Both the position numbers and the translations under genes were made by a program. From Ruditapes philippinarum (taxonomy: Eukaryota), in assembly GCF_026571515.1 (NCBI RefSeq), contig NW_026864322.1:1-64000 (forward strand): 64,000 nucleotides of DNA. The letters are read 5' to 3'. How positions within the stretch are numbered: position 1 is the stretch's first letter; each line of letters opens with the position of its first letter. This document shows positions 6,801 through 62,856 of the stretch, piece by piece. The notes below the pieces were generated by a model. The model saw nothing but the letters and a program-made list of their open reading frames with translations, was not told the origin of the DNA and did no database searches.

Positions 6801-7731
6801 CAACTGGATTCGTTAGCTGGAACAAAGGAGAACCAAACAATGGCCTTGGAAATGAGAATTGTGTGACAATAATCCATGGTACAGGCGGAAAGTGGAACGA
6901 TTGGCATTGTATCGGAGAAACCTTCTATATTTGTGAACAAGAAGGGTATGGACTAATTAATATCTATTTCTCATTGTTAAGTTTGCATAGGGGTCATGGA
7001 AAAATATTTTGTTAATGAGTTTGAATTTCCACTTCTAAATTTTCAGAAATCATGAAAACCTTTACGACATTGTTTTATAAAACTATTTTGTCTTTCTTCA
7101 GTTTCTGTTACTTTGTTACTTCTGACATTTTTTAAAGTTTTTTTCTGATATGTAAATACAAGTAGCTATTTGTTTTACCGACAGTCACTTTTAATGTAAT
7201 TCAACAGCTATTATACGAGAGGTGCGTTTCTTGGCAACATAAGTCTTATGACTTCCAGAACCTCACCCCCCCCCCAAAAAAAAGTCAATGCTCATCTAAA
7301 CAGCGCGCATTGGAATTGCATGAGATATATAATTATATAGAAAAATAATGAATCAAATCTTGTGCTGCATATAATTAAATGTTAGCTCTGAACATTTAGT
7401 TTGTAAATTTTATCAGATGAATAAGGATTCTGGTCTTTGTGTACAACTATCTTAATTTCCTTGTTCGTTGAAAGACGTAAGCATGAAATACATATATATC
7501 GCTTAGCTATTTGAGACACAATTAACTGCGAAACAATTGGAATGAGGGGAGACAGTGTTTTATACGTCATGCATTCATAGATGAAATGTTAAGGACGGCT
7601 TGGACGATTGGCCTTTACACTGCGTCGCTCTTTTTAAATATTACTGCTTTATTTCTGGATCACCTTTTGTATACTGTTTACTGATATCAGTTTAATATAT
7701 TTGCAGGGAAACGGATGGTATTGTTGGATAA
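3804..7731 (+). CDS. Secreted single-CRD C-type lectin (perlucin-like), lectin 1
   Basis: Exons 3804-3843 (MKVIGIILLFGGV), 5079-5161 (WSCPNGWIRHESSCYHFSHDMEPWTGAD), 6042-6132 (YMCNKMGGKLVEIETAAEN...), 6723-6945 (YWIGLSD...EPNN...ENC...WND...C...YICE) and 7707-7731 (ETDGIVG*). All introns are GT-AG, the frame is continuous, and phases are 1/0/1/2. Confidence 0.9.
3878..4748. mobile_element. Non-autonomous TIR element (Kolobok-like, AGG termini at a TTAA-like site), interrupted by a LINE fragment
   Basis: Termini AGGTCCACTATGTCTCAG...CTGAAGCATAATGTGCCT. The body at 4480-4748 aligns by eye with the uninterrupted copy at 31917-32224. Confidence 0.7.
3956..4475 (-). mobile_element. 5'-truncated non-LTR retrotransposon 3' end (CR1 group, Zenon-like)
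   Basis: Frameshifted ORFs 4225-4464 and 4104-4316 carry RFRTSSHNLAIEYGRY...RNERFCENC and LRKKYLKRYYYTWP, the typical C-terminal zinc-knuckle region. AATAAA and a short repeat tail lie near 3960-3980 on the - strand. Confidence 0.85.
6297..6625. repeat. 51-bp minisatellite, about 6 copies, in intron 3 of lectin 1
   Basis: TTTACTTT recurs at 6311, 6362, 6413 and onward. Unit is roughly GAATAAATTTACTTTGAAATAATGACAAATTGCTTTAGCTTTGGCAGTATT. Confidence 0.9.
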
Positions 7732-9492
7732 TACGTATGTCGTGTGTAAAGTCTGATTTTACTTTATTTCCTAACAAAGAAATACAAAGTTATGAGAATT
7801 TTTTTTTGTAGCATTTATTTATATTCTCCATAACCGTTTCGTCTCTTTAATTTTTTGGTCCTGTGATAAATTTACTTAACAGAAACACCTATCGTGTACC
7901 TGTTTTCTGTTGTTTTTTGTTGTTGTTGCTTTTTTTTTTTAATTTACCAAGTGATATGAAGATTGTGCGATAACTTGTATTTCGTATCATGTTGATGAAA
8001 GGACAACAAAATAATTCAAGCCAATTCATTAAGAATTCTGGTCTTAAAAGTTTTTATTTTTTCATTTTAATATGTACATGTATTCAAATATAAGAAGTTC
8101 ATCATTTTTTATATTGCAAAATTCCAGTTTTTAAATCTTTGGCTGCTATCCTCGGCCGAATTCTGTAAACAGTATAATTGCTTTTTCTGTGAAAGGACCA
8201 ATATAATTCTAGTTCCTTTGGGACAAGGCATTACAAGCTTTTAAAGCAGCAGACCTCCGGATTTGTGTTAATTTTCATGTAAACTTTAGAAATATATTTG
8301 ATAGTGAAATATTGTGAGGTGAATAAAAATAGTTATTTACGTATTGAAATCGGCACTTACAATCAAAGAAAATTACCAAAAAAGGGGTCAACATATGCAA
8401 AAACGGCCCTTACTGTGTTAGTAACGCAGTAGAAATAATTCTTAAACCACACATAACATGTAAAATATAACTTGGATCTTGAATGTTTTAACCTTTCTAA
8501 AAATGTCAGAACATTTTTCTCGAAATTGATTTTTTAAAAATATTTTGGCTTATCTGGAGGCTTGAAGCTTTAAAAATCTTCTACTATTATTCTGAAAGTG
8601 ACCCTATGTTCATGAAAGTGTAAAGCCAAGTGTAAATGATGGATGTCCAGGTCAGAGTCAGCTTGGATAGTCTAGTTTATGTGTATAATTAATATACCAC
8701 AAGACTGAAAGGAAATTTTATAAATATCCTTTGGGAAGAATATTTAGCGTTCAATTGATAAAGGGGTACTCTTCTTACATTTAATTTTAGTTGTTATATT
8801 TAACTCTTAACATTTTTCATTACCAGTTATTAGTCAAAAACCATTACAATAGTCCATTTATTTTAAACATACAGCTCATTCCGCTCACAGAAATGTACTC
8901 AATATCTCTTTAAGATTCGTGTCAAATGTGCTGGTAAAAATAACATGTTAAAATGAAAAGTCCTGTTTAACTACATTACATGCATCAACGAAAAGCAAGA
9001 TTACTCTTTGAAACTGTGATGAAAAATACAATCAACTCTTCTCCTTGTAACTAAATATCATTTTTGCTAGACTAAGTTTTATCTTTTGCTTGGGGAATAC
9101 AATTAAAACGAAGATTCCTCTTTTTAAATACAAAAGAAAATTTTAAGGGCCGATCACGTTTCACTTTAATGATGGAAACCAATAGTAGTATACTACTACC
9201 AATGACTGAACAAACATATAAAAGAAAAAGATATATATCGAAACAAAGCGTGTACATTTTCTTAAAAAGCATCCATTCAGTATATTGATCATTGACGCGT
9301 TGTTGTTCCTCGTTCATGACAAATTACTTCAAAAGAAACACAGATATCTTAAATATTTTGTGTGTTTAGACTGACATTGCCACAATCTCAATTTTATCAT
9401 TACTTATTATAACTGGCATTTGTGAACATCTGAAAACGAAGAACAGAGATATCTTGCATAATATACCCGCAGGAAAATAACTATAGTAATAA

Positions 9493-12963: not shown

Positions 12964-15900
12964 ATGGCGGTATTTCTATTGCTCGCGTTCCTAAGTGGAG
13001 TTTGTAAGTCTTTTGAATAATCATGATAATAATAATAAATGATTTTTAAAAGAAGAACACACAACACACTGTAGTACATAATTGAATAAATTGAATGTTT
13101 TGTAATATGTGCTCGTATAAGAACCTTTTACTTCACACTTTGAAATGTATATCGGTGTTTTAAAGCACTAGTAAGACGGACAAGAGGATGATACTGCAAA
13201 AAAGCCCCTAGACTCGTTTGAACAAATTAATATTTAAAAAGTAACCCTTAGATGATTAGAGGGCATTCTTTTAAATTTTGTCATGACCTAATACCTTAAT
13301 AAGAAACAACAGAATTAACTTTTTCAAAACGACACATAATTGGATCATCGCCCTGTATTTATACATGCATTATATAAATACTTATATCATTTGACATCAT
13401 TTAATGCTATGCAAATAAGCTGTGTGTAAAAACGAAATTTCTTGCATTGCAAGTAATAATACATTATTCAATTAACCAGATCATGATTTTCTGAAAAAAA
13501 ATATAATGCTATTTCAGGGAGTTGCCAAAATGGTTGGTTACAACACGACTCGAATTGCTATCACTTTAGCCATGACCTGGAAGACTGGACCGGTGCCGCT
13601 GTAACAACATTCTACTCGTTTATTTAAGCATTTGATTTATATTGCACCTTCACAATGATGACAGTGTCGTTATTTGTATGCAGTGTGTTTCGAAATGGCC
13701 GTGTGTAGTTTTGATCCTACCCTTTTTTGTTATGGTTAAGCACATAAGTACCTTTGCAACTATTAGAGCAATCTTCAACATGCGTTCTAAAGCGTGTTAC
13801 TTTGTTCACTTATATGCTTGTGGTCGCTTATTTATATTCTATCCTCTTTGAAATATTTCTAATGCATTTGCATCTTTCTGTTTTAAACTGAAAGTGTTCT
13901 TTAAATCTGTTTGTGTATATACCTGACTCTTTATATTCCAAAATAATTTTATCAGCTAGTGAAATGTTTTCTGTGTAAGCGGTAAAACGCTGCGTATTTT
14001 GTCTCTAAGTAATATACTGTGTAGTCAATTTCAATTATTTTGTCCAGGGCATATTTTTTTGCGTTTGTATATATTCACTTTATTTCAAGTGTGTAATTGA
14101 CTTAATAATTATTTTCTCAAAGCTTTGAATATTTAACATAATGTACGAGCCATTTGCAACGTAATTAAATGACGTATGCCAGTTAATAACCATGTGACTG
14201 ACGTACATGATAAATATTTACATTAAATCTCTATCTTAACTCTGATACTGTTTTCTTTCTCCTAATGCAGTTTTTAGAGGTCAAAATGCGGCAAGCACGG
14301 GTACTCAATTCGTGGTTTTAGATCGACGGCATTTTATAGATTTCTGGGCAATATTGGCATCTTGGCATAAGTCACGGAGTCATGCATTATATTTTAATGA
14401 ATATCTTGATTAATGGATTTGCTATGAATAAAATGTGCACCAGGTGATTACAAAAGCTGTTGAATAGTACTTGAAAAACTAAAGGGGTTCGAGTTTTAAG
14501 AGAATGTTGGTGTGATGGGAGAGGGGCAGCGAGATATTATAAGCACGCATGATGAGGAATAACATATTTGTCATTTTTAAACCGTAAATTACGCTTCATT
14601 TGATCAATGAACAAAAATACATTGTTTTCTGTCGTCTGTTACTAATTACTTTGTTTACCTCAATACTCAATATAAACATTCCTAATATCAAGATGGTGCG
14701 ACCTCATGAATTTATATTTGTTTAAGCACTTCAAAGGTTTGTAACATGTAAAAGAGTAACACTGTATCAATGTCATCAAGCTTAGTGACGTGATGGTGAA
14801 CATATAGCATCTGTCTAGAAATGTTGTTTTGAAGAAAAAAAACGCGTGTAATTTATGACTTTAAATGGATTCATAGTCAACATCTGCTTAAAGGGTATTT
14901 CTTTAAAACCAACGTTGTTGTTTTTTCAAGAAAAGTTCTATTCTTTTATTTCTAAAATCCAACTAATGATACTGGTTTATAAAAATGCATTTTCTTCCGT
15001 AGCACTTATTCTATATATTTACAGTACATGTGCAAAACAATGGGTGGTAAACTTGTCGAAATTGAAACAGCAGCAGAGAATTCTTTCTTGAAAGGAGTCG
15101 TCGACAATCGTAAACGTATGTAATAAAATATTTATACGTCCATTAAATGATATAGCCTTTCTTGTTAATAATATGTGTAAGGTGTGAGCAATTTGTGTTT
15201 GTTTATTGTTTATTTATGCCTTTTTATAATATATGAAATAGAGAAATACAAAATCTCTTAAGAACACCCAAAACAACAAAATTGAACATGTTGCTGGCTC
15301 GGTTTGATTGAGTCTGTTCATGGACAGTAGTTATAATTACATGCTGCCATTCACGATCTCTTGCAGCGGCTTAAGCATTATTCAACATTCTAACACGTAA
15401 TGGTAAAACTTGTAAGAAGTATAACGGAAAAAAGCTAGAAAAAAAAATCACCCACAGTGTTGCTTTACCCTATAAAATGGGCACATGCTCCAGGTATTTA
15501 ATATAAATAATGATATTTTATTCTAGAACAATTAATTTTATACTTCATAAATATATGTAATATCAGATCATGTATTTTACACTGACAAACATACATCAAA
15601 ATTGTTTCCACGGTATGTTACCGCGTATGATAATAAATTCTACTCAAATAGTTATTCATACAGACATTCCGACCTATGGACTAATGCACTCAGATACAAT
15701 GAAAATGCACCTTGAAGAATACCGTATTTTTATCATGTTTTTTCTTTTTTGCTATTGTTTTCCATGTGATAGCTTTTGTTGTTGTTACATTTATTTCATT
15801 TTACTAAATAAAAAGCAATGCTGCGTAATAACAATTGGACAAGAAAAAACAACAACAAATACCACCACCCCACCCCTCGGCAAAAAACGTCAACATGAAC

Positions 15901-16777
15901 AAAATAAGAAAATAGCATTGATAAATATGATAATAATTCAATTTCATAATCAATAATGTAATCACAATTAATATAGAAAAGTTATTTAAGATAATTAAAT
16001 GAATGCTATTAACTCTGCAACGTTGCATGGCAAATTTTATGCTTTATTTTGTTTAATTTTTACATATCTGGTTATAAATAATGCCTTACTCTAACATTTT
16101 AGACTCCTATTGGATTGGTCTAAGTGACGTCCAAGAAGAAGGTATTTGGATGTGGATGGACAGCAAGGCAAAGCTAAGTGATACTGGTTTTAGTAGTTGG
16201 GTATCCGGAAACCCAAACAATGATGGTGGAAATGAAAACTGTGCGACCATAAACCAAAATACGGGAGGGAGATGGAACGATTGGCAGTGTAGGCAAAGCA
16301 TTTTCTATATATGCGAAAGTGATATGTAAGTACTATACAATAACAAGTTTCATGTTTAGTTGTTCTAGCGAGTCTCCTAGCTAGAGTGTTCGTTTGCTTA
16401 ACCTAAAACGTCTCAAACTAATAAGGGACTTGGTAAAAGTATTTAATCGTTAGCCAAAAATAAAAGCAACTCACCATATTACTCGTTTCTAGAAGTCAAT
16501 GCAAATAATGACTAGACATAAATATATTACGTGACATAATGAATTGTTATTAAGCCCGTTTATATATACAAAATATTCATTTGTTTTCCAAATTTTACCG
16601 TACTGTCATAGAGCATGGAAAACATCGAAACCAAATGCGATAATGTCTTTAATGTATTAGTAAATTGAATTGTATTAAAATTTTTGACATAGCTTTACTG
16701 TAAGATAAGATCACCACCCCTATTCTTTCAAAAACATTATATTGATTTTTTTCAGAGAAACACAGGTCGTGGGATGA
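12964..16777 (+). CDS. Secreted single-CRD C-type lectin (perlucin-like), lectin 2
   Basis: Exons 12964-13003 (MAVFLLLAFLSGV), 13518-13600 (WSCQNGWLQHDSNCYHFSHDLEDWTGAA), 15025-15115, 16103-16325 (YWIGLSD...NPNN...ENC...WND) and 16756-16777 (ETQVVG*). Exon lengths 40/83/91/223 are identical to lectin 1. AATAAA at 16841. Confidence 0.92.
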
Positions 16778-21012: not shown

Positions 21013-21054
21013 GATCTCTGTCTTGTAATTTTATGATTTCTTCCAAACGCTGGC

Positions 21055-33068: not shown

Positions 33069-36000
33069 ATGTCTCCGCTGACGACAGTACTTCTATCATT
33101 GCTACTGCTAGGATTTGCAGCTTGTATGTATATAAAAATAATACTTTTATATTATATCAAAACTCTTTATAATACGTGTTCATACACATAGAGTACATTT
33201 GCGCACTGTTATTCTTAAAGTGACTGATTAAGAATGTAATTTTGAAATAGTTGGTAAAATACATATGATACATGCACAATATTATCAAAGTTTATTTACA
33301 AAACTTGGACTTTGTCGTAAAAATGATATTAATTTAAGGTATTTTGAATTATTTTATATGAATCTGGAAAAAATGCTATCTGCATCTACAAAGATAGTAG
33401 CGAGTTGACACAACTTTATGTATATCTGTCTCTTAAAAGGCGCTTAATTGTAATCTCGACACTGTCGGTTCGATTCCCGTGCTAGCCAACTAAAATTAAG
33501 TAACATATAAATGATATTTTCCGTTTTTTCTTTGTACCGATTTGTTCACTTCGATGTTAATTTTTCGTTTAAGTAAAGTCGTATTTTGAAACGGAGCGTG
33601 CGAAAACAATTTTTGTAGACTGCTCCTAATGATTTTACGTTTTTCACTACAATCAGATACCAAAAAATGGATGCCGCCAGCAATCAGTCTGAACACTATG
33701 GAGAGGTCTGATGACCTCTCCAATCAGTCATTCAAATGAGATTTAAACTCAAGGTCCGTTATAACACTGGTCACCTTAAAGAATAAGGAGAAACTTCTGG
33801 AATTGGGGCATCTTTCTGTACCTGTATCTTGCACTATCCTCCAAATTCTAAATAGACTCTCCTGGACGACTAGCCCATATGGGCTATCGGTTGCGTGTAT
33901 AAAAAAACAACAAATACACACACAAGAGATGTGCCATATTGTTCAGAACTTTTGATGGTCTGTTTAGAAACCATCCGTTTGTCTATATTAAGAAAGATGA
34001 AAAATCCATAAGGCGTATATAAGCTTGATCATTAAAATTATAATACACTGTAATGTGTTCCTTAAAACATATAAAAAGTGGCGATAAAGTCGGAATTTTC
34101 GATAATTTATGATGACTCTACTAGAAACCTTTCGTATTAAATATCGATTTAGAAAATGTTTATATGACACATTTTTCAGTAAGTCTGTGTAAAATAACCG
34201 CTTGCAAGTTGTTTTGTCCTAACAAAATCATAAAATTCAACAACAACAACAATAGTAAAAAACAACAAAAATGTAAAGAATAGAAAATAAAAGGTATAAA
34301 CAAAACATACACAAAAATACGAGATGGGCCGATTAAGTGATATATAATGTATCAGCACACTTGAAATGAAATCAAAGCGCTGGAAGCACTGGTAGCTTCG
34401 CGATTAGCTACAATGAACATAGAAGGGATGGGATTAGCACAGACGCAAAAAGTGCATACATAACAGTGTAAAAATACATATATGTTAACAATCAATCGAG
34501 TCAAAGAAAATAATCAAGTAGCATGATTGACAAATTTAAAAACTGAACCAACTTACTACAAATAATGCATCATGTTACAATGTATTGCATGTTTGTATTT
34601 TGAAATAGCAAGCAATTGCCCGGATGGGTGGGTACATTTTGGAACATCGTGCTATCATTTCAGCCATGATACAGAATCTATGCCTGTAGCAGATGTAAGT
34701 TTTCATTACACAATGAATTATCATATAACATGTTTTCCACAATCTCTCAACAAATTTCTTATCAAACAAAGGAAACATGTAAATATCATATATGTTTGGT
34801 CTAATCATCGATTTAAATGGAATTTTGACGCGATGACATGTCGAATGACGTCAATGACGTTAATAAACTACATGACGTCAATTTTGTTATTTCTCCATTC
34901 CACGCAGTTAAACTGTTTTCAACAAGTCTTTGTCTTTGACCATACTAGTAGTTGGATTATGGATTGTTTATTGGTTTTTCTGCGTTACCATGTACTAATT
35001 CTTGCACTTTTTTATTCATTTGCAAGTTATATTATTATGTCTGAAATCAAAATCTAATTCCTCAATAAAGTCACGTGTTTGTCATTTCAGTAAGATCACT
35101 TTATATGCCAGTGTCATATGATTGGCCAAAATTCACTTGTAAATGTCGTCATTTTTCTACATGTATAACAAATAATGGGCTCGATATTATTAGATTGACA
35201 GAATGATAGTAAGCCTTTTATGATTGTACTTTATTTCAGTTGGTATGTCAACATTTGGATGGACATCTGGTGGAGATAGAATCAAGTGAAGAAAACACAT
35301 ATCTCGCATCAAAAGCCGCGGCACTAAAAGGTAATTCAATTAAAGGGAAAATGTTAAAGATAAACTATGCTCAACATTGAGTAAAATATTTTTGTTGCAG
35401 AAATTCATTGAAATCTATCAAATTCCTGCTGAATATGTCTTATTTATTATTTGAATAAAATAATGTACATACTTTGTATGGGAAGCTGCGTTTCTTATTA
35501 AAGGTAAAGTAAATTAAAGTAAATTTGGTCCTTTCTGTAAAAAGCTATTTAAAGTTAAAATTATCTACTTTGTGTGAAGTCAAACATGTTAATTTGATAT
35601 TTACAAAACATTTTAATTTAATATTTAAAAAAAAAAACAAAAAAAAAAACAAAAAACAAAAAAAGAAAAGAAAAGAAAAAAAAACTGTGTAACAATTATT
35701 TATATTTTCAAATATCAAATTTGAGTAGAATCTATCTTTAAGAAACGACATAAATATGCCTTATATTTACTTTCTACCGGGACAAAAGATGACACTTTGA
35801 GTCCCAGCTTTCTATAAACATTGAGCATTGTAAATTATCACTCCACATTTTAGGCTATATAAGAGTTTATTACATTATTACAATAATATTGATGTAATAA
35901 AAATATTTATTTTACTAGTTTGAAACAATAAATACTATTGGAACATCCTTAAACGCCAATATCTTCCAAGTGATGTCAATACAAACTCATAATGTTGTCT

Positions 36001-38049
36001 ATTTCATGCCTAAAGTATGATGTTGAAATTTTCGCCGTATAATTTGTGAATTTTCCACTTATTTTTTTAAACATTTTGATCACAATTTTGCAGCTAATAA
36101 TGAAAATATTTTACATAATATTTCTTCTTGCTGTTGCCAATATTGGCAAAGAATAGTGCAACTATTTGCTATAAGACGTATTAAATTCCTAGGTGTTCTA
36201 ATATCATAAATACATTTTATTTATGTTGTTAAAAGTTATTTACTTTTCATGAATTCACCGAATACTGTTGTTTCTTTAATATCAGTTTGAAATAATTTGT
36301 TTCGAAGGCTGTTTTTATTTACCCCTAAAGCATCATTTTGGACTGGTTTAAGCGATATGCAACAAGAATCAGTCTGGTTATGGTACGACAGTGGACGTCA
36401 TCTAACGTCAACGAGTTTTCAACACTGGTTTCCAAACGAACCTAACAATGCAGGAATGGACGAAAACTGTGCATATATATCCTCTGGTAGTTGGAATGAT
36501 GCACCATGTCACTTGGCACTCCATTATATTTGTGAAAAGGATGACGGGTGTGTGTTGTTGTTGTTTTCTTCTTCTAAGTCTACCTTTTTACGAGGGTCTA
36601 ATGTTTCGTTTACCAAAACATCAACAAGCTAAGGGGAGGAGATGGTTCACACGTTATTTTAATTATTAATTAATTTAATTACTTGAATAAAACATTGTAA
36701 CAACATAATCAGATGTAATGTAACTAAATGTTATCATTTTTTCTTTTTATCTTAGCTATCTATCCTACCAAATTAACTTTTTTCATTATATTCATCTTAT
36801 CCATCAATCGTATCCAACTTATACAATATATCCGACTTATCCGTTGGACTGAAAGCATAGTATTTGATTAATCATGACAAAATTTCGTTAATACAATGAG
36901 ATGATATGCTTTGTGTCTAAACTGCTAAATACTTCTATTTGGGCCTTTATTTCTTGTCAAAAATCTACAATGAAACCATTTCAATTGCACTCTTCTAAAT
37001 GGCGGACTTACTAACAAGGGAAATAACTAATAAATCATGATGATGTGGATAATAACGTTGGTGGTTATTGCTATAAGTGGGGATGACGACGACGATAATT
37101 ATGTTGAATGTTGATTATAACGACAACGACGATGATGATGACGACGACAACGACTATATAGCTAATGACGACAAAGATAATGATAATGGTGACGAAGATA
37201 ATGATGATGACAACAATAATGATGACGACATCGATAATAATAATAATGATGATAACGACGATTGTAATGCTGATAATAATTATGACGACAATATTGATGA
37301 CGACGACGATAATGATTATGGCGACGAAGCTAATAATGATGACGGCGACGATAATAATGACGAGTCCGACGAATGAGATGTTGATGACGAAGACATTGGT
37401 GATGTTTATGATGACGACAACTATAATAATAGTGATGATAACCGCAACTATAATGCTGTTGATGATAAAAGGAGAATAATGGTGACGATTCAGACATCGA
37501 CGATGATGATTATGATGATAACAACGTTAATGAAGGACATCTTTTGTTTAACGATAACTTTCAAATATTTCCTAGCACATTAATAACATTTTGATATATA
37601 TACAATAAAGTAATTATAAATGAATTTAAATGTGGAAATTGACTTAAAACATTTGACTAGGGCAGAATATTCCCGAGCCTTTCCCGTGCAATATATCAAT
37701 TTCTCTTGTAATGATCCTCAAGCCATATACCTGAACTGCCACGTAATGCCATTACGGTTAAAAGGCATTCGTATACGATAGGTGTTTTCGTTTGGGTAAA
37801 TATTATACGAGCAGTATACAAGTATACGTTTATAGCTTTATATGAACATGTTTATATAATAACAGAAACTATTTCGAAAATAAGCATGGTGCACTGTTAC
37901 TTGAATCATATCAATATATCAATTACAAATTAGTTCTTTTAGTGGTAATGACTGAATGTTTTTAATTAATTAATTGTAACTACAGCAAATTAACAAAAAA
38001 ACTAAATATTATTGTCTTTTTTTCCAGCTCATCGGAAATAGTCGGGTGA
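33069..38049 (+). CDS. Secreted single-CRD C-type lectin (perlucin-like), lectin 3
   Basis: Exons 33069-33123 (MSPLTTVLLSLLLLGFAA), 34609-34694 (SNCPDGWVHFGTSCYHFSHDTES...), 35240-35330 (LVCQHLDGHLVEIESSEEN...), 36331-36547 (FWTGLSD...EPNN...ENC...WND) and 38028-38049 (SSEIVG*). AATAAA near 38080. Confidence 0.92.
33425..33925 (+). mobile_element. tRNA-derived SINE (Nin/Deu-domain-like), split by an insertion of about 220 bp
   Basis: The head TTGTAATCTCGACACTGTCGGTTCGATTCCC and the body at 33722-33925 match the SINE at 39054-39375. Confidence 0.65.
37080..37530. repeat. Degenerate (GAT/GAC/AAT)n trinucleotide microsatellite in intron 4 of lectin 3
   Basis: Seen directly; it produces the low-complexity D/N-rich and M/T/I-rich ORFs. 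Confidence 0.9.
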
Positions 38050-39375: not shown

Positions 39376-39627
39376 TTAAAAAATGATTTGCAGTGGTCGT
39401 GTGTGAAAGTGACGATAAACGCGTTTTCAAAGAGAATCAACAATTGTTTCTGACATGAAGACATCGGAAAAGTGATTTGTATCAGTTTGATGTCAGTCTG
39501 AACCAATAACGTGTGTGCAAATTTTCAGATCATTCGCCTTCGTAGTTTTTTTCCATGTAATGATTTACATGAATTAAAGTGAACCAAAACTGAAAAGCGT
39601 TTTAACGCCTTTAACTCAATCCGTTAA

Positions 39628-50554: not shown

Positions 50555-53500
50555 TTGCTGGGTGTATGTCAGGGTGGCTTCGTCATGGCAATAAGTGTTA
50601 TCATTTCAGTCATGATAAGGAATCATGGATCAATGCTCTTGTAAGTAACCAAGTTTATCATAACACTTACTGTAAGTTTGATCATTAATGGAAAGTTTAT
50701 CAGACCTCTCCACAGTGCTGAGAATGATTGCATTGTGAAGTGAGCAAATCGTTAAATGGAAAAATTGGAAGATACTAAAAAATTACCTAACATTTAACAC
50801 TACGAACAGTGGTTATTTATCACTTGATTAGGTTTGCAATCATGTATGTCAAAGTTAAGATATCTAGGGGCATCGTGACCTAGTGGTAAAGGTCATTGAC
50901 TTCAAACCACTTGCCCCTGACCGCTGTGGGTGCGAATCCCGACAGGGACTTTGGATTCCGTCATGTGAAGAAGCTATCTAGTTGGCTTAAGGAACGTCGG
51001 TAGTTCTATTCAGGTGCCCGTTCGTGTCTGAAATAATGCATGAAAGGGCACCACAAGACTGAGGTCTTCCTCCACCAGTAAAAGTGGAAAACCGCCCATA
51101 CTGTGTTGGTGCAACTTAAAATCAAAAACAAAAAATAAGATTTGCTAATTAAGAAATAATATGTCAGCCACGTTTTAGTTTAAGTCAAAATTCCTCTATC
51201 TTTAAAGTCAAAATAGTGTTATCTAAACTATCATGACATCCAACATGTATCATAGATATATTGACAAGGCCGATAGAGTTCCATGTGTAGATTTTATCAT
51301 ACTGCTAACTGCTTCTAAATGTACTGATAAAATAAATTACACATTGTAAAATGCAAAAACGAAATTCCAAAAATAGTTTTTTTAAATTAACAAAAAAAAA
51401 GCCTTACCGGGAAAACATATGTTTGGCAAAGAAAATCCCAAATTGAATACGGAACCTAAAGTTTTTATGAAAAAACAAAAAAACTAAAACTTTTTGAAAA
51501 TTTTAAAAGTCTGTATGAAAAAATGGGAATCATAAAAGTGAAAAAAATGTAAAAAAGGGAAGATATGAAAGAAGGGGAAATTAAAAGCGAAAAAACAGTG
51601 TTAAGACCAAGTTCTGTCAGATTCCTGGGACAAATTATTGGTTAGCTTTCCCTATGAAAAATTGAATTATCGACCCTCCTGCCATAAGTATTAAAAATTT
51701 AAATATGGGGAATTTTTTGAATTTTGGGGTAACGCTTTTCCCTTTTAAAATTTTAAATTTCCAAAATTGGGGCCCGATCTGAACAAAATTTTGGGAAGGG
51801 AGGAAATTTTAATTAAAATCTTCTCAAAGAATGCAGTGTATAGCTGTCAATTCCTTCGGAGCCATTTTACGCATGCGTAAAACCTCGCTTGTCTACAATG
51901 TATTCAATTCCAATTTAACATAAAGTGCATTGACATTACACTGTCAAAGCAACCAAGTCATGAAAACAATTCAATGTCCCGAACGGGAAAAGGGCAAGTG
52001 ATTTGAAGACCATTCGTCCATGGACGCCCCTGTTGTTCTTCTTGTTGTTGTTTTTCTTGATAATACCAACAACAGATGTTTGTTATAAACCTCTGTTTTT
52101 CAGAATATGTGTAAATTGTTTGGCGGAAACCTGGTCGAAGTAGAAACAGCGACTGAAAATAGCTACATAGCAGCTATTGTCAAACTCCGTGGACGTTAGT
52201 AATTTCTCTTTTAATGATAATGTTCCTAAAGAAATTGGCAAAAAACGCTTTTAAAAAACGCTTGTAAATACGTGCATGGATAAACCATATGATCAAAATA
52301 CATATATGTATATTTAGTTTTGTTTTCTTGAATGTATTATAATTTTAGTTAGATATATGTCACTATCTTCTTTAATTTCTTGAAAAATCATACAATCGTT
52401 TGATGTAACAATTGAAAAATCATTTGCCCCTCACCTCCTTGGGTTCGAATCCCGCCAGGGACTTTGGTTTCCTTCATGTTAGAAAGCTCTGCAGCTATAG
52501 CTACGGAACGGTGTGGCAACAATTGCAAAGCTGGAAGGTCGCAATATGATATATACTGTGTTAACCTTCGCTCCCCAACTCCAAACCCAGGCACAAACCT
52601 ACTAAAAATACACCCCCCGCAAAAATGACAAATAGAAGAATTTCGATTGTTAATCTATCTAATGATGATATATTTACCTTATCAGTAGAATACTGGATTG
52701 GACTTACTGATGTCTTCGAAGAAGGTATATGGCTTTGGATATCAAATAAAAACCAACTTTCTGACAGCGGTTATGTTAACTGGAGACATGGCGAGCCAAA
52801 TAACGAAAGATCTAACGAAAACTGCGCTGAAATGGAAACTTCTGGATTGTGGAACGACGACTCTTGCGATAAGTCTCAACACTTCATTTGCGAGACTGTA
52901 AACAGGTAAGGTTTTTGAGAAAAGAAATTATTTCAGTAAACCGTCGTAAACTAATGTTTAGTTTTTGGTTTGTTTTTTTTCGCGAAAAATAAAAAATAAA
53001 ATGCCATTTTGATTAAAAGTGACATAAAGCCCATCCTAGAGTACATACAATGTAGTTAGTGATCATTTGAAAATCAAAATAAGTTTACTTTTGTCCATAT
53101 TTCCTTTTAATTTTATAATTTACTTCGCAAGAATGATTAATAGCTCACGTGTACCAAAAAAATCTCTGAAATTATACTGAATTACTGATAATAATAATGA
53201 CGAGAATAATGGTGACGATTCAATCATCAACACTGGCGATTATAATAAAAACATAATAAAAACAATGTTAATGAAGCACATCCTTTGTTTTACCATAAGT
53301 TTCAAATATTTCATAGCACATTAATAATATTTTCATATATGACAATATGGCAATTATAAATGTATCTAAATATGGAAATTGACTTAAAATATTTTACTAG
53401 AAAAGAATATACTCGAACCTTTCCCGTGGATAGATCAATTTCTCATGAAATGACCCTGAACCGTCACGTAATGCCATTAAATTAAAAGACATTCATTTCG

Positions 53501-53751
53501 TCTGTGTGAATAGTATACAAGCAGTATACTAGTATATGGTTATAAAAACTTCATATATAAAAAATGAAAATATTTCGAAAAATCAACAACAAAAACAATT
53601 ATCAAAATTTAAAGATTTTTTTCTCTCTTTGGGAAAAAGGGGGCCCGAAAAAGTTTTTTAAAAAATTTTAAAAAAAAAGTAAACTACAGGGAAAATTTAA
53701 AAAAAAATAATTTTAATTTTTTCCCCCCCCCCATCGGAAATAGTTGGGTTT
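50555..53751 (+). CDS. C-type lectin (perlucin-like), lectin 4; exons 2-4 intact, exons 1 and 5 uncertain
   Basis: Exons 50555-50640 (AGCMSGWLRHGNKCYHFSHDKESWINAL), 52104-52194 (NMCKLFGGNLVEVETATEN...) and 52686-52905 (YWIGLTD...EPNN...ENC...WNDDSC). A terminal exon remnant TCGGAAATAGTTGGG (SEIVG) lies at about 53731-53751 in low-quality sequence. Confidence 0.82.
50867..51135 (+). mobile_element. Near full-length tRNA-derived SINE
   Basis: A-box TGACCTAGTGG, B-box-like GGTGCGAATCCC, body GGGACTTTGGATTC...AAGCTATCTAG...CTTCCTCCACCAGT and an A-rich tail. Four other partial copies occur in the window. Confidence 0.8.
52420..52570 (+). mobile_element. Partial SINE (family of 50867-51135)
   Basis: CATTTGCCCCTCACC...GGGTTCGAATCCCGCCAGGGACTTTGG. 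Confidence 0.7.
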
Positions 53752-54650: not shown

Positions 54651-54960
54651 GTGTCAGTCCGACTAGCTCAATCTGTTAGAGCGCGAGACTTGTAATCTCG
54701 ACATTGTGGATTCGATTCTCGGGCTTACCAACTAAAATTACAAAGCAGTCTGTTGGATGAGACTTTAAATCGAGGTCCCGTGTATGAGTGTTAAACATTT
54801 GGCACGTTAAAGGACCAGGAGGATGTTCTGGAATTTGGGGCATATGTCTGTATTTGTATCTTGCACTATCCTCCAAAATATAAATATCTTACATCTTCTG
54901 GAGGACTCGCCAATATTGGTGACCGGTGGCGAGTATAAATAAACTCAAATACACACACAT
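54651..54960 (+). mobile_element. tRNA-derived SINE, duplicate of 39054-39375
   Basis: Near-identical sequence and flanks; part of the segmental duplication. Confidence 0.75.
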
Positions 54961-55801
54961 TAAAAAATGATTTGCAGTGGTCGTGTGTGAAAGTGACGAT
55001 CGACGCGTTTCTCAAAGGGAATCAACAATTGTTTCTGACATGAAGAAATTGGAAAAGTGATTTGTATCAGTTTGATGTCAGTCTGTACCAATAACGTGTG
55101 TGCAAATTTTCAGATCATTCGCCTTCGTAGTTTTTTTCCCATGTAATGATTTTCATGAATTAAAGTGAAATTAAAACTGAGAAGCGTTTTAACGCCTTTA
55201 AGTCAAGCCGGCTAACATTACTCATAGCTCGAAATATCGATTTTCTAATTTAGTTCTAATTTTCAATTTTTTTATAATGTTTCATATTTTATGATATAAT
55301 CTTAAATTTAATGTTTAAGGCTTTTGGACCTTAGTTGGGGAGCTTATATAAGTGCAGTCTATCTAATATATATAGCCCACTTATGGACCTTAGTTTGGGA
55401 ACTTTATTATACCAAAACTTTTTTAATTTTAAAATTTATATCATTATTCAAAAATTACAACAATAAATTACACTTAAAATCATGTCATTAAAAATAAATT
55501 CGGGAAAAAAGAAAATAGATAAGGATTTTTCAAAAAACAAATAAAAAAAAATTCCCCAAAAAATTACACACATTTTCAAAGACAAAATTTCAAATTTGTT
55601 CAAAAAATGAAGTTTAAAAATTAACTTCATTTTCAAAAGGGAAATGGCAAAATATAAGTTTTTTTTTTGATTGATAAAAATTCTTAAAAAATGTGAAAAT
55701 TTATTTTTACTCTAAAATTTAAAAAAATTTTAATAACAATTTTAAAATTTACATTTTGAAATATTTGAAAAAAGAATGTTGTAAAATAATATCCAAAAAA
55801 A

Positions 55802-58800: not shown

Positions 58801-61800
58801 TCAAGCTTTCACAAGGTCATATTTGTTTTCAATACTGATGGGAATATGTATCATTACTCTACTTTGGTAAATATTTATAATTTTACAGTTAAAAAGTGTT
58901 TGTAAATCGGAATTTACACCGCGTAAAATCGAACCGTACGCGCATCACCTAAGCGCATGTTGTTTACAACGTTGGGTACCCAACGGGGAAATTTAGTGTG
59001 TATATTACCCGTCTGGCTCGGTTATATCAATTTCTTTCGGGTGATCAATATCCAATCAAAAAGGCGGAAAAAATCTGGAAGGGTAATAATAATGAATATC
59101 TTATTATAGATTAAACAAATTTATTTACCTTAGAATAATACTTCGCCGTCACAGCCTGACCCAAGGGTACCGCGTGGCTCAGTATCACACCGTCGACGTC
59201 AAAGAAGACGATGAACATCTGTTTCCTTGCAGATCCGATCTTTCGTGTATTTCGCGAATTGTTATCCGACGATCGTTGTCAAGCAGCTCCTTTATCACAG
59301 CGACGTGATTTGACGTTACGTTGGGACGTCCACTGCGTTTGTCGTCATGGATGCTTTGTTGGCCGCCTAGAAATCGGGCATACCACTTGTACATTGCTGT
59401 TTTCTTCATCGCCTGATCACCATATACTTTTTGTAATCTTAACATTGTTTCTTTCTTTGAAACCCGTTCAAAACACAAAATTTTATTGAAGATCGTTGTT
59501 ACGATGCCATTTTAACGCATTAACATGACGTCATGTGCGTAACGCCAACATGTTGCGCGTAAATTATGCAAAGTTTGGTGAAAATCGCACGGTAAACGGT
59601 AAAATGCGACGTCATTATTAACCAGTGACTATTTGTAAAAATGAACAAAAGTGGGCCGGTAATCGCTACATGTGGTTACCATAACGACCGTTTGTTAACA
59701 TATGATTCATGCCAGAACGGCAATATTTGCTGTTTATTTTCAAAATATGTTTGTCTCTATTACTGTATAAGTTTTATTCAGCTAACTTTGAAAATAAGGA
59801 AATAGCGACACTTTTCCGCGTATTTATTGAACAGCCCTCGTATATACGTCATAAGCTTCATGCGTCGTAAACTGTATGCGGTGCAACATTGCCCTATCCA
59901 TGTTCTGTTCAATACACGAGTGTGTACCTGATAAGCATGTAAGCAAGATTGCTACCTCGTAAAAATTGAAGAGCACAATTCAGTTTATATTAAATCAATT
60001 TTCCCCATGTGGTACCTCAATTTTACTTTTGCTTACAATTCCGACAATGTTAGGGCTGTTTAGGGTAAACTGAAGCTGAAATGTATAAATAAAATAAAAT
60101 TCACATATAAAAAAAAGGAAAATAAACTTACATCAATTCATTCAGTTTACCAATCACCGATCATCGTCTTTATTTTTTATAACATTTTAACAGTCTAAAA
60201 AATACTCTTTCTTCCACACGCAAAACTGCACTTGATGACTTAAATTTTGGGCATATGTATTTTTTTACTAGCAATAACTGTTAACAGGGTCTTTCAAATT
60301 CTATTTGAAAGACCCTGCTGTTAAGTAATGTGTAAACAAAACTTGTTTTCCAAGTTCCTAGTGACTTTTAGAATGTTTACTCATCTGTCAACATCTATTT
60401 ATTGTCTGTTACAATCCAACAAGAATGTATGTAAAATTAATGTATCAAAATAAAAACCCTCTGAATAAAACACATTTTATATTTTCCTCCCGTGAAAAAC
60501 ACAACTTTAAATATAGCGGTCGCTTACATTACAATGAACAGTCTAATGCAAACTTCCGCGAAAAAAAGGGAACGGCATGGTGTAACCTTTTCTTCTTCTA
60601 TAATTGTTTTTTGTTTCATTTATTAATTAAAACAAGCGAATATTCATTTTTTTGTATAAAATAGATCATCACCTTTTAATATTGATTTTGGACTTATTTT
60701 CTTGCCCAAGACTTTGTATATTTATTAGAAATACTTCTGAGATTGAGGGCTACCAGTGGGGAAAACAGATTTGATATTCAAGTTGATGTAATTGAGGAAA
60801 ATTAATTTAAACTTGAAATTAAGCATAAAATTAAAAAAGATTTTTTTAGTGAAATATATTGTTATTTCATTTTATCTTACACATAAACAAACTATTATCA
60901 TTATTATTTGTTATGATTTTTTGTGTGTTTTAGAATATGTGTAAATTGTTTGGCGGAAACCTGGTCAATATAGAAACTGCGACTGAAAATAGTTACTTAG
61001 CAGCTACTGCAAAACTTCGTGGACGTTAGTAATTTCTATTCCAATTTATCTTAGTATTTATTCAAAAGGGACAAACTTTTGTGAATGCCTGTATAGATAA
61101 AGTATTAAATGGACCATGAAATGAGCATTCTGTTTGATTTTCTTGTAATATATTATGAACTAGGTACATTATTGTATATGGCATGTGTAAATTTGTTGAA
61201 CAGTCCTCCTAATTGAAAAACACTTTTATGAGTCCGCTTTTGAATCTTCTAATGACAAATTCCTCTTTGTACTTATAATAGACTACTATTGGATTGGACT
61301 AACTGATGCGCAAGAGGAAAGTATATGGCGTTGGATTTCAAATACAGGCAAACTGGTATACAGAGGATATTTCAACTGGGCTTCCGGAGAACCAAATAAC
61401 CGTGGGTCTGACGAAAACTGTGCTACAATAAGCACTTCTGGATTTTGGAACGATATCCCATGTTATAAGAATGCTCATTACATTTGCGAGGCTGACAACA
61501 GGTGAGATTTCTAGAAAACAACTCGACCAAATGATGTCTAAGTGTCAGCCGCAACTTTAAGCCCTTTCCGTCTGTCTTGGGATAAGTACCTCGAACACAA
61601 TAGTAAGAATTTACAGAAGAGATAAGGTATTTACAGAAGAGATATGGTATGGTAACCTACGCTAAGAAACTAAACATGTAAACAAATAGTAATTTGATGC
61701 TGGGAGTTGTTGACTGGATTCATAATGCAAAAGTCCACCTTAATTAAGTAAATTCATAGCTATAAAAATAAACAGTACACTTTTTCGAAGTAGTCATATA

Positions 61801-62856
61801 CTTTTGATTTAAACTTCCGTTGGTATGGACGCGTTGTTTGCCAACTTTGTTATAATGTGACCAGTCAGAATCTGCAAATTATTGGCTAGCGTTTCGGTAC
61901 CGAAATAAGCAGTGTGCTGCCCAAACAAAAAATGTGTTTATTTTTTTATATAATAGTTATCTATAATAAATCCTGTTGCAAAATAAAAAGCAAAAATAAA
62001 GAAAAGAAAAAACAACAACAACAAAACAATAAAACAAACAGAATATCTTGCGTAATTATGGGTCTCCCTATCAATTGACAAGAACCGTCAAATACCGATG
62101 AGAACCTATATATTGCAAATAAACACATATACATGTTATTTATTATATGTAATACAGGCAGAGCATATTTAATTTTATATTTGATTTTGTTTTTGTCTTT
62201 TTTATGTAGAAAATTAAAAATATGAGTACCGACACATTACCAACAAGAAAATAAAATTGGGTGCAACGCGTATACTGAACGTTGATACCGACAAGAAACG
62301 ATTTGTAGTTTACATGATCAGTAACAAGATTTGTGCTGAAAACATCTTATGAACATGTTTCCACTTTATTTCAAGTTAATTTCACTTTTCATATTCAAGT
62401 TTTGACACATAACACTTTAAAGCGAGAGTAGCTTATTTTTATTTTGAAACTAAAAAAAAATACCTATACTCCTTTTAACTCTAGATAAAGGATTTGATAC
62501 AAATACTTTTTTTCCATTACACTATAGATCTTGAAACCCAAATAAATCTGACATCTGACATCATCAAGCTTACAACGCATTTTGCACATTTCGTGTCTGA
62601 ACGGACATTTGTCTGTTTTTTTGTTTTTTTTGTTGTTGTTTTTTTCTTTTGTGCTTATGTTGAAAGGTCGTCGGGAATTCTTTAAAGTATCAGGATGAAC
62701 TTATATGATTTCATACAATAACACAATCTAAAGTTTTCAAAAATTAAAGGTTATTCATGAATTTAAACGTATTTATGTTATTAACATATTCACCGTTCCT
62801 TGTCAAAGATTACTTTTATTCCGTTTGTTTTCAGTGAGGAAACCATTGTTGGCTAA
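55802..62856 (+). CDS. C-type lectin (perlucin-like), lectin 5; 5' end corrupted by poor sequence quality
   Basis: Exon 2 3' half HDTESWIGAV ends at 55887 (GTAAGT donor). Exons 60934-61024 (NMCKLFGGNLVNIETATEN...), 61282-61501 (YYWIGLTDAQEE...EPNN...ENC...WNDIPC...YICE) and 62835-62856 (EETIVG*). Exons 3-5 are absent from the ORF track. Confidence 0.85.
55966..56139. other. Assembly gap
   Basis: Run of N. Confidence 0.99.
56720..57462. mobile_element. PIF/Harbinger-like MITE
   Basis: 24-bp perfect TIR AGGCCTCAACAGACGGTAGGATTT, extending imperfectly to about 45 bp, with TAA duplicated on both sides. Confidence 0.85.
57722..59840 (-). mobile_element. Defective mariner (DD34D) transposon
   Basis: TA|CGAGGGCTGTTCAATAAA...TTTATTGAACAGCCCTCG|TA. 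HTH region in ORF 59185-59478 (RSGRP, DRRITIREI); catalytic C-terminus in 57972-58328 (HHDNAPSH...YSPDLAPCD, 34 residues between the two D's). It has an early stop, a frameshift and an internal deletion. Confidence 0.95.
58433..59089. mobile_element. Long-hairpin non-autonomous element (Crypton-like) inside the mariner intron
   Basis: Palindrome with arms of about 60 bp at 58457-58590, followed by the IR pair TTATTACCCTTCC (58596) / GGAAGGGTAATAA (59077). GGTAAT occurs at both ends. Confidence 0.6.
60285..60317. mobile_element. 33-bp minimal TIR element with a 7-bp flanking direct repeat
   Basis: CTGTTAA|CAGGGTCTTTCAAAT-TCT-ATTTGAAAGACCCTG|CTGTTAA. Confidence 0.65.

What the first reader, a model, noticed from the sequence alone, without database searches (positions are those of the whole stretch)
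7707..62856. Every lectin in the array ends in a dedicated micro-exon encoding an acidic-[IV]VG-stop C-terminal tag
Seen: after the complete CRD, each gene has a phase-2 intron of 0.4-1.5 kb and then a 22-25 nt coding exon. These read ETDGIVG* (7707-7731), ETQVVG* (16756-16777), SSEIVG* (38028-38049), SEIVG (about 53731-53751, damaged) and EETIVG* (62835-62856). The codons differ (ATT/GTC/ATA, GTT/GTG/GTC, GGA/GGG/GGC, TAA/TGA) while the peptide and the Gly-stop position are kept, which points to selection on the protein. Known: the CTLD fold is complete at the last Cys, so the tail is not needed for folding, and a C-terminal Gly is the substrate for peptidylglycine alpha-amidating monooxygenase. 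Inference: this is a portable tag for sorting, amidation, beta-strand docking, oligomerisation or covalent coupling. I know of no described function for it.
Basis: partly seen in the sequence, partly recalled or inferred. Interest (0 to 1): 0.8.

Follow-up and report, generated by a model that had tools for sequence, protein, structure and literature searches.

The report
Conserved glycine-ended tail on clam lectins
Each C-type lectin gene in this Manila-clam array really does end in a tiny last coding piece that adds an acidic stretch finishing in Ile/Val-Ile/Val-Gly; most small lectins of clams and oysters share this tail, and its untested purpose best fits a signal for C-terminal amidation.

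Summary
Four of the five lectin genes have an intact 22-25 nt terminal coding piece behind a phase-2 intron of 430-1480 nt. The fifth is damaged in this assembly.

- **Gene models:** Public Ruditapes philippinarum RefSeq proteins match the window exon by exon. They include the tail for genes 1, 2, 3 and 5. Logan contig-derived proteins show the same junction for genes 2 and 3.
- **Same genome:** 18 of 30 lectin-domain exons carry such a piece within 1.5 kb downstream. Controls gave 0 of 30 upstream and 0 of 30 antisense.
- **Other bivalves:** 48 of 59 single-domain bivalve lectins, from clams to oysters, end in hydrophobic-hydrophobic-Gly. None of 210 other lectin hits does.
- **Selection:** All Gly, Ile and stop codons are used, so selection acts on the peptide.
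- **"Portable tag":** Not supported. In a genome-wide pattern scan, 20-21 of 31 hits lie behind lectin exons and none lies behind another recognised terminal domain.

The function is untested. I favour PAM amidation of the invariant terminal Gly, at about 0.4. The genes are already annotated. I found no paper describing the tail.

The parts
3804..6132 (+). Gene 1 (XP_060566251.1, perlucin-like) exons 1-3: 3804-3843, 5079-5161, 6042-6132
   Evidence: Exact residue blocks of P0159 on the window with GT/AG at the ends
6723..6945 (+). Gene 1 exon 4, the C-terminal half of the C-type lectin domain; phase-2 donor GT at 6946
   Evidence: Pfam Lectin_C E 5.9e-12; donor; P0159 residues 73-146
7707..7731 (+). 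Gene 1 terminal coding piece, g|ETDGIVG-stop, 25 nt, behind a 761-nt intron
   Evidence: P0159 residues 147-153 at 7708-7728
12964..15115 (+). Gene 2 (XP_060566256.1) exons 1-3: 12964-13003, 13518-13600, 15025-15115
   Evidence: P0272 blocks
16103..16325 (+). Gene 2 exon 4 (lectin domain); phase-2 donor GT at 16326
   Evidence: Pfam E 3.3e-13
16756..16777 (+). Gene 2 terminal coding piece, a|ETQVVG-stop, 22 nt, behind a 430-nt intron
   Evidence: RefSeq P0272 and Logan P0274 both end ...SDIETQVVG
33069..35330 (+). Gene 3 (XP_060566252.1) exons 1-3: 33069-33123, 34609-34694, 35240-35330
   Evidence: P0271 blocks; joints 34694>35240 and about 35327>36329 in contigs of runs X1 and X4
36331..36547 (+). 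Gene 3 exon 4 (lectin domain); phase-2 donor GT at 36548
   Evidence: Pfam E 1.5e-14
36548..38027 (+). Gene 3 intron 4 (1480 nt), partly retained in run X1; holds a GAT/AAT-type simple repeat at about 37077-37497
   Evidence: X1 contig runs 36329-36783 past the donor. Further X1 contigs cover 36836-37143 and 37264-37945, while bins inside introns 2 and 3 have zero depth
38028..38049 (+). Gene 3 terminal coding piece, c|SSEIVG-stop, 22 nt; AATAAA at 38080
   Evidence: Logan P0001 and RefSeq P0271 end ...KDDGSSEIVG; the X4 contig leaves the donor with 30 letters that account for the depth in the bin holding this piece
50566..52905 (+). Gene 4 (XP_060566253.1, partial model) exons at 50566-50640, 52104-52194 and 52686-52905; phase-2 donor GT at 52906
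   Evidence: P0171 blocks. The RefSeq model ends ...ETVNR by reading through the donor
53731..53751 (+). Gene 4 remnant of the terminal piece (..SEIVG). It has no AG acceptor and no stop, and sits in a homopolymer-rich stretch
   Evidence: homologous to the gene 3 tail region (73% mean column identity)
60937..61501 (+). Gene 5 (XP_060566254.1, partial model) exons 60937-61024 and 61282-61501; phase-2 donor GT at 61502
   Evidence: P0190 blocks; own-genome match 61281-61499
62835..62856 (+). Gene 5 terminal coding piece, t|EETIVG-stop, 22 nt, behind a 1333-nt intron
   Evidence: P0190 ends ...ADNSEETIVG

Best explanation
**Shown**
- The window holds five tandem members of a large, bivalve-wide subfamily of small single-domain C-type lectins. 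RefSeq names them 'perlucin-like', among other names. A sixth member lies just beyond the window.
- The genes share one plan: four coding exons, then a phase-2 intron, then a terminal exon whose coding part is only 22-25 nt.
- That piece adds about six residues. Together with the last residues of exon 4 it forms a tail of about 11 residues after the last Cys.
- The tail is a variable polar or acidic linker, usually Glu/Asp at -4, Ile/Val at -3 and -2, and an invariant Gly as the very last residue. In one gene the ending is Gly-Lys.

**Inferred (about 0.4)**
- The flexible linker presents the hydrophobic-Gly end to peptidylglycine alpha-amidating monooxygenase (PAM) in the secretory pathway.
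- PAM removes the Gly and leaves a C-terminal Ile/Val-amide. This abolishes the terminal charge and protects the lectin from carboxypeptidases.
- Where intron 4 is retained or read through, a tail-less lectin results.
For: **Structure and use**
- Exact match of RefSeq proteins to the exons, terminal pieces included, for genes 1, 2, 3 and 5.
- Logan contig-derived proteins P0001 and P0274 carry the junction.
- The X4 contig leaves gene 3 exon 4 at the donor.

**Family-wide**
- 18 of 30 own-genome loci carry the piece, against 0 of 30 and 0 of 30 in the controls.
- 19 of 30 are found with a looser rule. Three more pieces lie 1.8-4.2 kb away.

**Conservation**
- 48 of 59 bivalve proteins end in hydrophobic-hydrophobic-Gly. 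They come from Ruditapes, Mercenaria, Meretrix, Mya, Mactra, Dreissena, Saccostrea and Crassostrea.
- 0 of 62 other hits and 0 of 148 multi-domain representatives do so.
- Gly is last in 48 of 48 tailed proteins.

**Selection on the protein**
- 27 distinct micro-exons use 4 Gly codons, 3 Ile codons and 3 stop codons.

**For amidation in particular**
- An absolute terminal Gly is PAM's one hard requirement, and hydrophobic penultimate residues are good substrates (recalled knowledge).
- The only extension ever seen is a single Lys, the classical Gly-basic signal (P0153; genome L011).
- The full-length public models start with short hydrophobic N-termini.
- Copper monooxygenase family exons are present in the genome.
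- A mussel study reads a Gly before basic residues as a PAM signal in secreted immune peptides (passages of PMC12294457). Big defensins are stated to be C-terminally amidated (passage of PMC7203481).
Against: - No mass-spectrometric or structural evidence was available.
- PAM needs neither the conserved acid at -4 nor Ile/Val at -3.
- 39 of 48 tails have exactly 11 residues after the last Cys. That hints at a fixed docking register rather than a mere enzyme handle, although many of these proteins are close paralogues.
- Amidation of folded ~15 kDa proteins is uncommon (recalled).
- The PF01082 matches may be dopamine-beta-hydroxylase-like genes. PAM orthology was not established.
- The solved clam lectin codakine has a chain of 129 residues, with its last conserved Cys numbered 124 in the review. 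That relative therefore lacks or loses such a tail.
- Run X1 shows intron-4-containing gene 3 transcripts, so the tail is dispensable for at least some product.
Confidence: 0.4

Rival explanations
1. The tail is a non-covalent docking strand. The Ile/Val pair packs against the lectin domain of the same or a neighbouring chain. It stabilises the N/C-terminal base of the fold or builds dimers or oligomers that raise avidity.
For: - Beta-branched hydrophobic pair behind a linker of nearly fixed length: 11 residues after the last Cys in 39 of 48.
- The proteins have six Cys, all assignable to the three usual disulfides (invariant or near-invariant columns). Any oligomer would therefore be non-covalent.
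- Other bivalve lectins are dimers (review passages).
Against: - This does not explain why the last residue must be Gly with the stop directly behind it: 48 of 48 tailed proteins and 26 of 27 micro-exons, the 27th adding one Lys.
- Tail length varies from 10 to 13 across orders.
Confidence: 0.25
2. The tail is a sorting or receptor-recognition signal read with its free carboxylate. It could act as a granule or lysosome targeting motif, or as a handle for a haemocyte receptor that takes up lectin-coated particles.
For: - A short, terminal, conserved motif on a flexible acidic linker.
- It sits on a separate exon. Intron retention or read-through yields a tail-less lectin, so the tail could be switched on and off.
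Against: - No partner is known.
- Known C-terminal carboxylate readers prefer a hydrophobic last residue, not Gly (recalled).
- The motif was not found behind other secreted families in the pattern scan.
Confidence: 0.15
3. The conservation is at the RNA/DNA level only. The piece exists to supply a stop codon, splice enhancers and the polyadenylation region, and the peptide has no function of its own.
For: - Terminal exons must be recognised by the splicing and 3'-end machinery.
- The piece has a constant 22 nt in 25 of 27 copies.
Against: - Synonymous positions vary freely while the residues stay fixed.
- The peptide end is kept between clams and oysters even though the preceding residues differ.
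Confidence: 0.05
4. One reading: the same terminal piece is shared with unrelated secreted protein families.
For: Ten of 31 strict pattern hits have no lectin exon detected upstream. They include two sequences present in three copies each, ending ..LEIIG and ..D[TI]DIVG.
Against: - None of these 10 has any recognised terminal domain upstream within the 1.5-4.1 kb examined.
- One has an in-frame stop. One lies in a gene with a hormone receptor domain, where it is most likely intronic chance. One locus is cut by a contig end and one was not examined.
- The scan was shaped on the lectin exon plan, so it cannot see tags coded otherwise.
Confidence: 0.07

Closest known systems
Ruditapes philippinarum RefSeq 'perlucin-like protein' / 'CD209 antigen-like protein D' / 'hepatic lectin-like' (XP_060566251.1, XP_060566256.1, XP_060566252.1, XP_060566253.1, XP_060566254.1)
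   Same: They are the products of these very genes. Exact residue blocks lie on all mapped exons, and four of the five models include the terminal piece.
   Different: Automatic names only; nothing is said about the tail. The gene 4 model ends by reading through the donor (...ETVNR). Genes 4 and 5 are partial models.
Manila clam 'lectin precursor 4' (AZS54111.1 / A0A451ET89) and Meretrix meretrix C-type lectin (ANG56319.1)
   Same: Single-domain secreted lectins of about 153-156 aa ending ...ETDAIVG and ...QTEIIG. The first is 75% identical to the gene 1 product.
   Different: They are separate database entries, not RefSeq genome models. I take them to be cDNA-derived from their names only. 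I saw no paper on them that mentions the tail.
Gly(-basic) amidation signals of secreted peptides (PAM substrates), e.g. mussel myticalins
   Same: A terminal Gly, or a Gly followed by basic residues, on a secretory-pathway product of a bivalve immune gene family (passages of PMC12294457).
   Different: Those are peptides of 17-47 residues cut from precursors. Here the carrier is a whole folded lectin domain, the Gly is genomically terminal, and amidation is not shown.
Codakine (PDB 2VUV/2VUZ), C-type lectin of the clam Codakia orbicularis
   Same: A long-form single lectin domain of a bivalve. It aligns to residues 16-146 of the gene 1 product.
   Different: The chain is 129 residues, with the last conserved Cys numbered 124 in the review, so there is no 11-residue tail. 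It is a disulfide-linked dimer through an extra Cys that is absent here.

Membership tests
C-type lectin-like domain (Pfam PF00059) | Profile match above the curated cut-off | tested here: met
   46.7-60.4 bits against a cut-off of 22.6 for the exon 4 ORFs of genes 1-4. Gene 5 exon 4 matches P0001 at E 2.5e-19.
C-type lectin-like domain (Pfam PF00059) | Long-form cysteine set (C0, C0', C1-C4) | tested here: met
   Cys at positions 16, 27, 44, 118, 134 and 142 of P0159 are invariant or at least 90% conserved in 58 sequences.
C-type lectin-like domain (Pfam PF00059) | Ca2+-dependent sugar binding (EPN/QPD and WND motifs, activity) | tested here: inconclusive
   EPN and WND are present in genes 1, 3, 4 and 5. 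Gene 2 has NPN. Binding was not assayed.
Bivalve tail-bearing single-domain lectin subfamily (defined here) | Phase-2 donor after the last Cys-Glu, and a 22-25 nt terminal coding piece ending in hydrophobic-hydrophobic-Gly-stop | tested here: met
   Genes 1, 2, 3 and 5 are intact and gene 4 is damaged. The same plan is seen in 19 of 30 own-genome loci.
PAM (amidation) substrate | C-terminal Gly, alone or followed only by basic residues | tested here: met
   48 of 48 tailed proteins. 26 of 27 micro-exons end Gly-stop and one ends Gly-Lys-stop.
PAM (amidation) substrate | Entry into the secretory pathway | tested here: inconclusive
   Hydrophobic N-termini of 13-20 residues precede the first Cys in P0159, P0271 and P0272. 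No signal-peptide predictor was run.
PAM (amidation) substrate | The enzyme is present in the organism and co-expressed | tested here: inconclusive
   34 exon matches to PF01082 in the genome. The family also holds DBH-like enzymes. Orthology and co-expression were not tested.
PAM (amidation) substrate | Amide found on the mature protein | not testable with these tools
   Needs mass spectrometry of the native lectin.
GPI-anchor signal | Small omega residue followed by a spacer and a hydrophobic C-terminal stretch | tested here: not met
   The stop codon follows the Gly directly, or after one Lys.
Micro-exon in the strict sense (internal exon of at most about 30 nt) | The whole exon is short and flanked by two introns | tested here: not met
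   It is the terminal exon. Only its coding part is 22-25 nt, and 3'UTR with poly(A) signals follows.

The most novel reading that the evidence does not exclude
- A whole family of folded ~15 kDa secreted lectins is C-terminally alpha-amidated.
- The family has been conserved from clams to oysters since their early Palaeozoic split (date recalled).
- The amidation goes through a genomically terminal Gly that sits on its own tiny coding piece.
- Splicing versus intron-4 retention then decides between an amidated form and a tail-less form of each lectin.
Probability: 0.25. Interest if true: 0.7.

Novelty: new variant of a known kind. Interest (0 to 1): 0.5.

Why it matters
Bivalves have hugely expanded C-type lectin repertoires. 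Papers on them treat the proteins as bare carbohydrate-recognition domains.

- **An overlooked feature.** Most single-domain members in clams and oysters carry a short tail with an invariant terminal Gly, coded on its own piece. Two recent family-wide papers do not mention it by the terms I searched.
- **A cheap test.** Native lectins, or existing clam and oyster proteomics data, can be searched for a C-terminal peptide 58 Da lighter than predicted and ending in an amide.
- **If amidated.** It would add folded lectins to the short list of amidated proteins. It would also explain why tail-less recombinant lectins may misbehave.
- **If not amidated.** The tail is a candidate oligomerisation or sorting handle that expression constructs should not drop.
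- **Annotation.** Models that end by reading through the exon 4 donor are probably truncated. Examples are ...ETVNR...QPLE and ...EKI.

Tried and rejected
**Readings rejected**
- **Chance.** The bare 12-nt motif is not enriched in the window (5 against 3.4). A fixed-spacing pattern caught only 2 of 4 intact pieces. I therefore dropped motif counting and tested placement instead.
- **Gap artefact.** Rejected, because no unit spans an N run.
- **GPI signal, ER-retention signal.** Rejected, because nothing follows the Gly and the ending is not KDEL-like.
- **Portable tag.** No support.

**Searches that gave little**
- **Representatives search.** Multi-domain lectins swamped the best 150, and only P0143 was useful.
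- **First word search.** It returned a single Logan protein.
- **PDB search.** No solved relative carrying the tail appeared among the 60 listed.
- **Atlas search.** It added only 'mollusc lectin clusters'.
- **GYL paper (PMC9965136, passages).** A different C-terminus and no help.
- **Codakine structure paper (PMC2662075).** Not held.
- **Raw RNA runs X21 and X23.** They did not cover gene 3 exons.
- **The search of earlier findings by words.** Blank.

**Limits on the literature check**
- I did not ask for supplements. The sequence lists of PMC10140915 could show the tail without comment.

**Exon joining**
All full-length sequences used are public proteins returned by the tools.

Full report
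**What is in the window**

The window is 64 kb, 31.5% G+C, with three N runs. On the + strand it carries five C-type lectin genes. Their large last domain exons score 46.7-60.4 bits on Pfam Lectin_C or match a relative at E 2.5e-19 (gene 5).

Each of these exons ends at a GT donor with two codon letters before it.
- 7707-7731 (ETDGIVG)
- 16756-16777 (ETQVVG)
- 38028-38049 (SSEIVG)
- 62835-62856 (EETIVG)
- a damaged copy at about 53731-53751

All four intact pieces follow a pyrimidine tract and AG, and they read in the frame set by the donor.

Neither assembly gap inside the finding touches these units. 31689-31896 is intergenic. 55966-56139 lies upstream of gene 5 exon 3.

**Whose genes they are, and whether the pieces are used**

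A word search with the gene 3 exon 4 ORF found one Logan protein, P0001. It ends ...KDDGSSEIVG, which is exactly the predicted spliced end.

Cluster look-up then gave RefSeq proteins of Ruditapes philippinarum from one 110,099-nt contig:

| Gene | RefSeq protein |
|---|---|
| 1 | XP_060566251.1 |
| 2 | XP_060566256.1 |
| 3 | XP_060566252.1 |
| 4 | XP_060566253.1 |
| 5 | XP_060566254.1 |

All five lie on the window as exact residue blocks, exon by exon. For genes 1, 2, 3 and 5 this includes the terminal piece. The window is therefore Manila clam, or something extremely close to it, and the exon 4-5 junctions are already in public gene models.

A second Logan protein, P0274, shows the gene 2 junction.

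**Reads (gene 3 only)**

- **Run X4, contig of 1159 nt.** It joins exons 2, 3 and 4 and stops matching at the donor (36546), with 30 of its letters left. At its depth of 48, 30 letters give 48 x 30/131 = 11. That is exactly the depth reported for the bin that holds the terminal piece. The joint itself is not in the printed table, so this is an inference.
- **Run X1, contig of 764 nt.** It joins exons 2-3-4 but then runs on past the donor to 36783. Further X1 contigs cover most of intron 4 at depths 2-12.9, against 49.8 for the spliced contig. Bins inside introns 2 and 3 have zero depth. Intron-4-retaining gene 3 RNA therefore exists, and it would code a product without the tail.
- **X1, another contig.** It matches from 38025 onward. 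Before that it carries 255 other letters whose end translates, by my reading, to an exon 4 end of the gene 4 type (...HFICETE..). A gene-4-like transcript in that animal is thus joined to an SSEIVG-type piece.
- **Raw RNA runs X21 and X23.** They did not cover the gene.

**Gene 4**

Its terminal piece lacks the AG and the stop, and it sits in a stretch with 10-17 homopolymer runs per kb. RefSeq ends this gene by read-through (...ETVNR). Whether the lesion is real or an assembly fault I cannot tell. The X1 contig suggests that intact alleles exist.

**The same plan across the genome**

The genome, G000, has 1.41 Gb in 15,874 contigs. It holds at least 150 matches to the lectin domain exon. A sixth array member lies at C12809:69460-69696, with a DESIVG piece.

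In the 30 best loci:
- 19 have a phase-2 donor and a phase-2 terminal piece within 1.5 kb. One of them ends DSEIVGK.
- 3 more (L013, L020, L026) have their piece 1.9-4.2 kb away, by the coordinates.
- 1 locus (L002) is cut short, but its RefSeq protein ends SSEIVG.
- 1 is window gene 4.
- 2 are unresolved.
- 4 are multi-domain genes without such a donor.

With a fixed rule the detector hit 18 of 30 downstream in sense, 0 of 30 upstream, 0 of 30 antisense and 5 of 600 resampled sequences.

Twenty-seven distinct lectin-linked pieces were collected:
- 22 nt long in 25 cases and 25 nt in 2.
- Gly codons: GGA 12, GGC 7, GGT 5, GGG 3.
- All three Ile codons are used.
- Stops: TGA 13, TAA 10, TAG 4.

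So the residues are held while the synonymous letters drift.

**Across bivalves**

A profile search listed 120 of 163 hits. I examined 59 bivalve single-domain proteins, including three Logan proteins of unnamed source. Of these, 48 end in hydrophobic-hydrophobic-Gly, one with an added Lys:

| Taxon | With the ending |
|---|---|
| Ruditapes | 15 of 17 |
| Mercenaria | 17 of 18 |
| Meretrix | 1 of 1 |
| Mya | 2 of 3 |
| Mactra | 2 of 3 |
| Dreissena | 2 of 2 |
| Saccostrea | 3 of 3 |
| Crassostrea | 4 of 5 |
| Sinanodonta | 0 of 3 (two still end in Gly) |
| Logan | 2 of 4 |

None of 62 other hits, mostly vertebrate, ends this way. Nor does any of 148 multi-domain representatives.

In the 48 tailed proteins the last positions are:
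- -1: Gly, 48.
- -2: Val 29, Ile 18, Phe 1.
- -3: Ile 35, Val 9, Leu 3, Phe 1.
- -4: Glu 26, Asp 8.

The end lies 11 residues after the last Cys in 39 of them, with a range of 10-13.

Several of the 11 exceptions look like models truncated by read-through of the donor (...ETVNR, ...QPLE, ...EKI).

**Is it portable?**

A strict pattern for the exon was searched genome-wide: acceptor, 7 letters, acidic codon, two Ile/Val codons, Gly, TAA or TGA. It gave 31 hits against 2 for the reversed control.

- 20 lie behind lectin exons. 15 are, one is window gene 3, one has exons 2-3 upstream, and three are placed by the coordinates.
- 1 more is probable (C4712:136532).
- Of the remaining 10:
  - six are copies of two sequences;
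  - one has an in-frame stop;
  - one has only a hormone-receptor-domain ORF upstream;
  - one is a singleton on C157 with nothing upstream;
  - one is cut by a contig end.
- Of the six repeat copies, one was not examined, and only one copy of each repeated sequence was extended to 4.1 kb.

I see no second family using the tag. The scan could only see tags built like the lectin one.

**Mechanism**

Shown: a conserved terminal peptide with a variable acidic linker and an invariant hydrophobic-Gly end, on public full-length models that start with hydrophobic N-termini.

Inferred: the Gly is the donor for PAM amidation.
- The strongest argument is that the one absolutely fixed feature is a Gly in last place. 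That is PAM's requirement (recalled).
- The only extension seen is one Lys.
- Mussel myticalin authors read Gly-basic ends the same way (passages).
- Big defensins are stated to be amidated (passage).

Against:
- The acid at -4, the Ile/Val at -3 and the near-constant length are not needed by PAM and suit a docking strand.
- There is no MS evidence.
- PAM itself was not pinned down.
- Codakine lacks such a tail.

**Novelty**

The genes and junctions are already annotated.

I found no description of the tail in:
- six full-text searches;
- term searches inside a 2025 review of bivalve C-type lectins (PMC12842671, passages: no 'tail', 'amidat', 'exon' or 'propeptide');
- a 2023 family-wide genomic study (PMC10140915: no 'C-terminal', 'exon', 'motif' or 'amidat' in its text).

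Subscription journals and supplements were not searched.

I rate it a new variant of a known kind, of moderate interest.

Noticed in passing
It skips gene 2's terminal piece and gene 3's exon 1. This is a conjoined read-through transcript across 18 kb, or an assembly chimera.
   Followed up: partly
window 36548-38027: Intron 4 of gene 3 is covered by RNA-run X1 contigs at depths 2-12.9, while bins inside introns 2 and 3 have zero depth. This is selective retention or an alternative 3' end that yields a tail-less product.
   Followed up: partly
window 19474-21012 (-) and 28700-30067 (-): Two intronless ORFs of 512 and 455 aa with VWA domains (VWA_4 E 6e-12 and 2.5e-13) lie antisense between lectin genes 2 and 3.
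   Followed up: partly
window 45148-46799 (+) and 48722-49639 (-): Retrotransposon remnants lie between genes 3 and 4. One is a 475-aa ORF with a reverse transcriptase domain (RVT_1 E 9.7e-31). On the other strand is a related C-terminal part without a Pfam match.
   Followed up: partly
window 57972-58328 (-) and 59185-59478 (-): Mariner/Tc1-like transposase fragments (DDE_3 E 2.9e-6; HTH_32 E 3.3e-8; Mos1-type HTH) sit inside the 5' part of gene 5. This may explain why its public model is partial.
   Followed up: partly
window about 40000-42000 and 53000-56000: These stretches have 10-22 homopolymer runs of 6 or more per kb, against 0-6 in most of the window. They look like poorly polished assembly. 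The damaged gene 4 tail lies in one of them, next to a gap.
   Followed up: partly
window 39147-39506 (-) and 54676-55015 (-): Near-identical ORF translations follow gene 3 and gene 4. The duplicated unit therefore extends well past the lectin genes.
   Followed up: no
G000: C3158:87222, C12363:67945, C13389:279482; C6896:664815, C15107:177993, C15107:245480: Two sequences that look like lectin terminal pieces (ending ..LEIIG and ..D[TI]DIVG) occur in three copies each. No lectin exon lies within the 1.5-4.1 kb examined upstream. They may be captured 3' ends in a repeat.
   Followed up: partly
G000, e.g. C67:330368-361745, C1982:46962-77206, C8154:82849-106159: 34 exon matches to the copper type II monooxygenase family (PF01082) fall in several clusters. 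That is many loci for a family that includes PAM and dopamine beta-hydroxylase.
   Followed up: no
G000:C12809:69460-69696 (locus L010): A sixth lectin gene of the array lies just beyond the window. Its terminal piece reads DESIVG-stop and sits 1445 nt downstream.
   Followed up: yes
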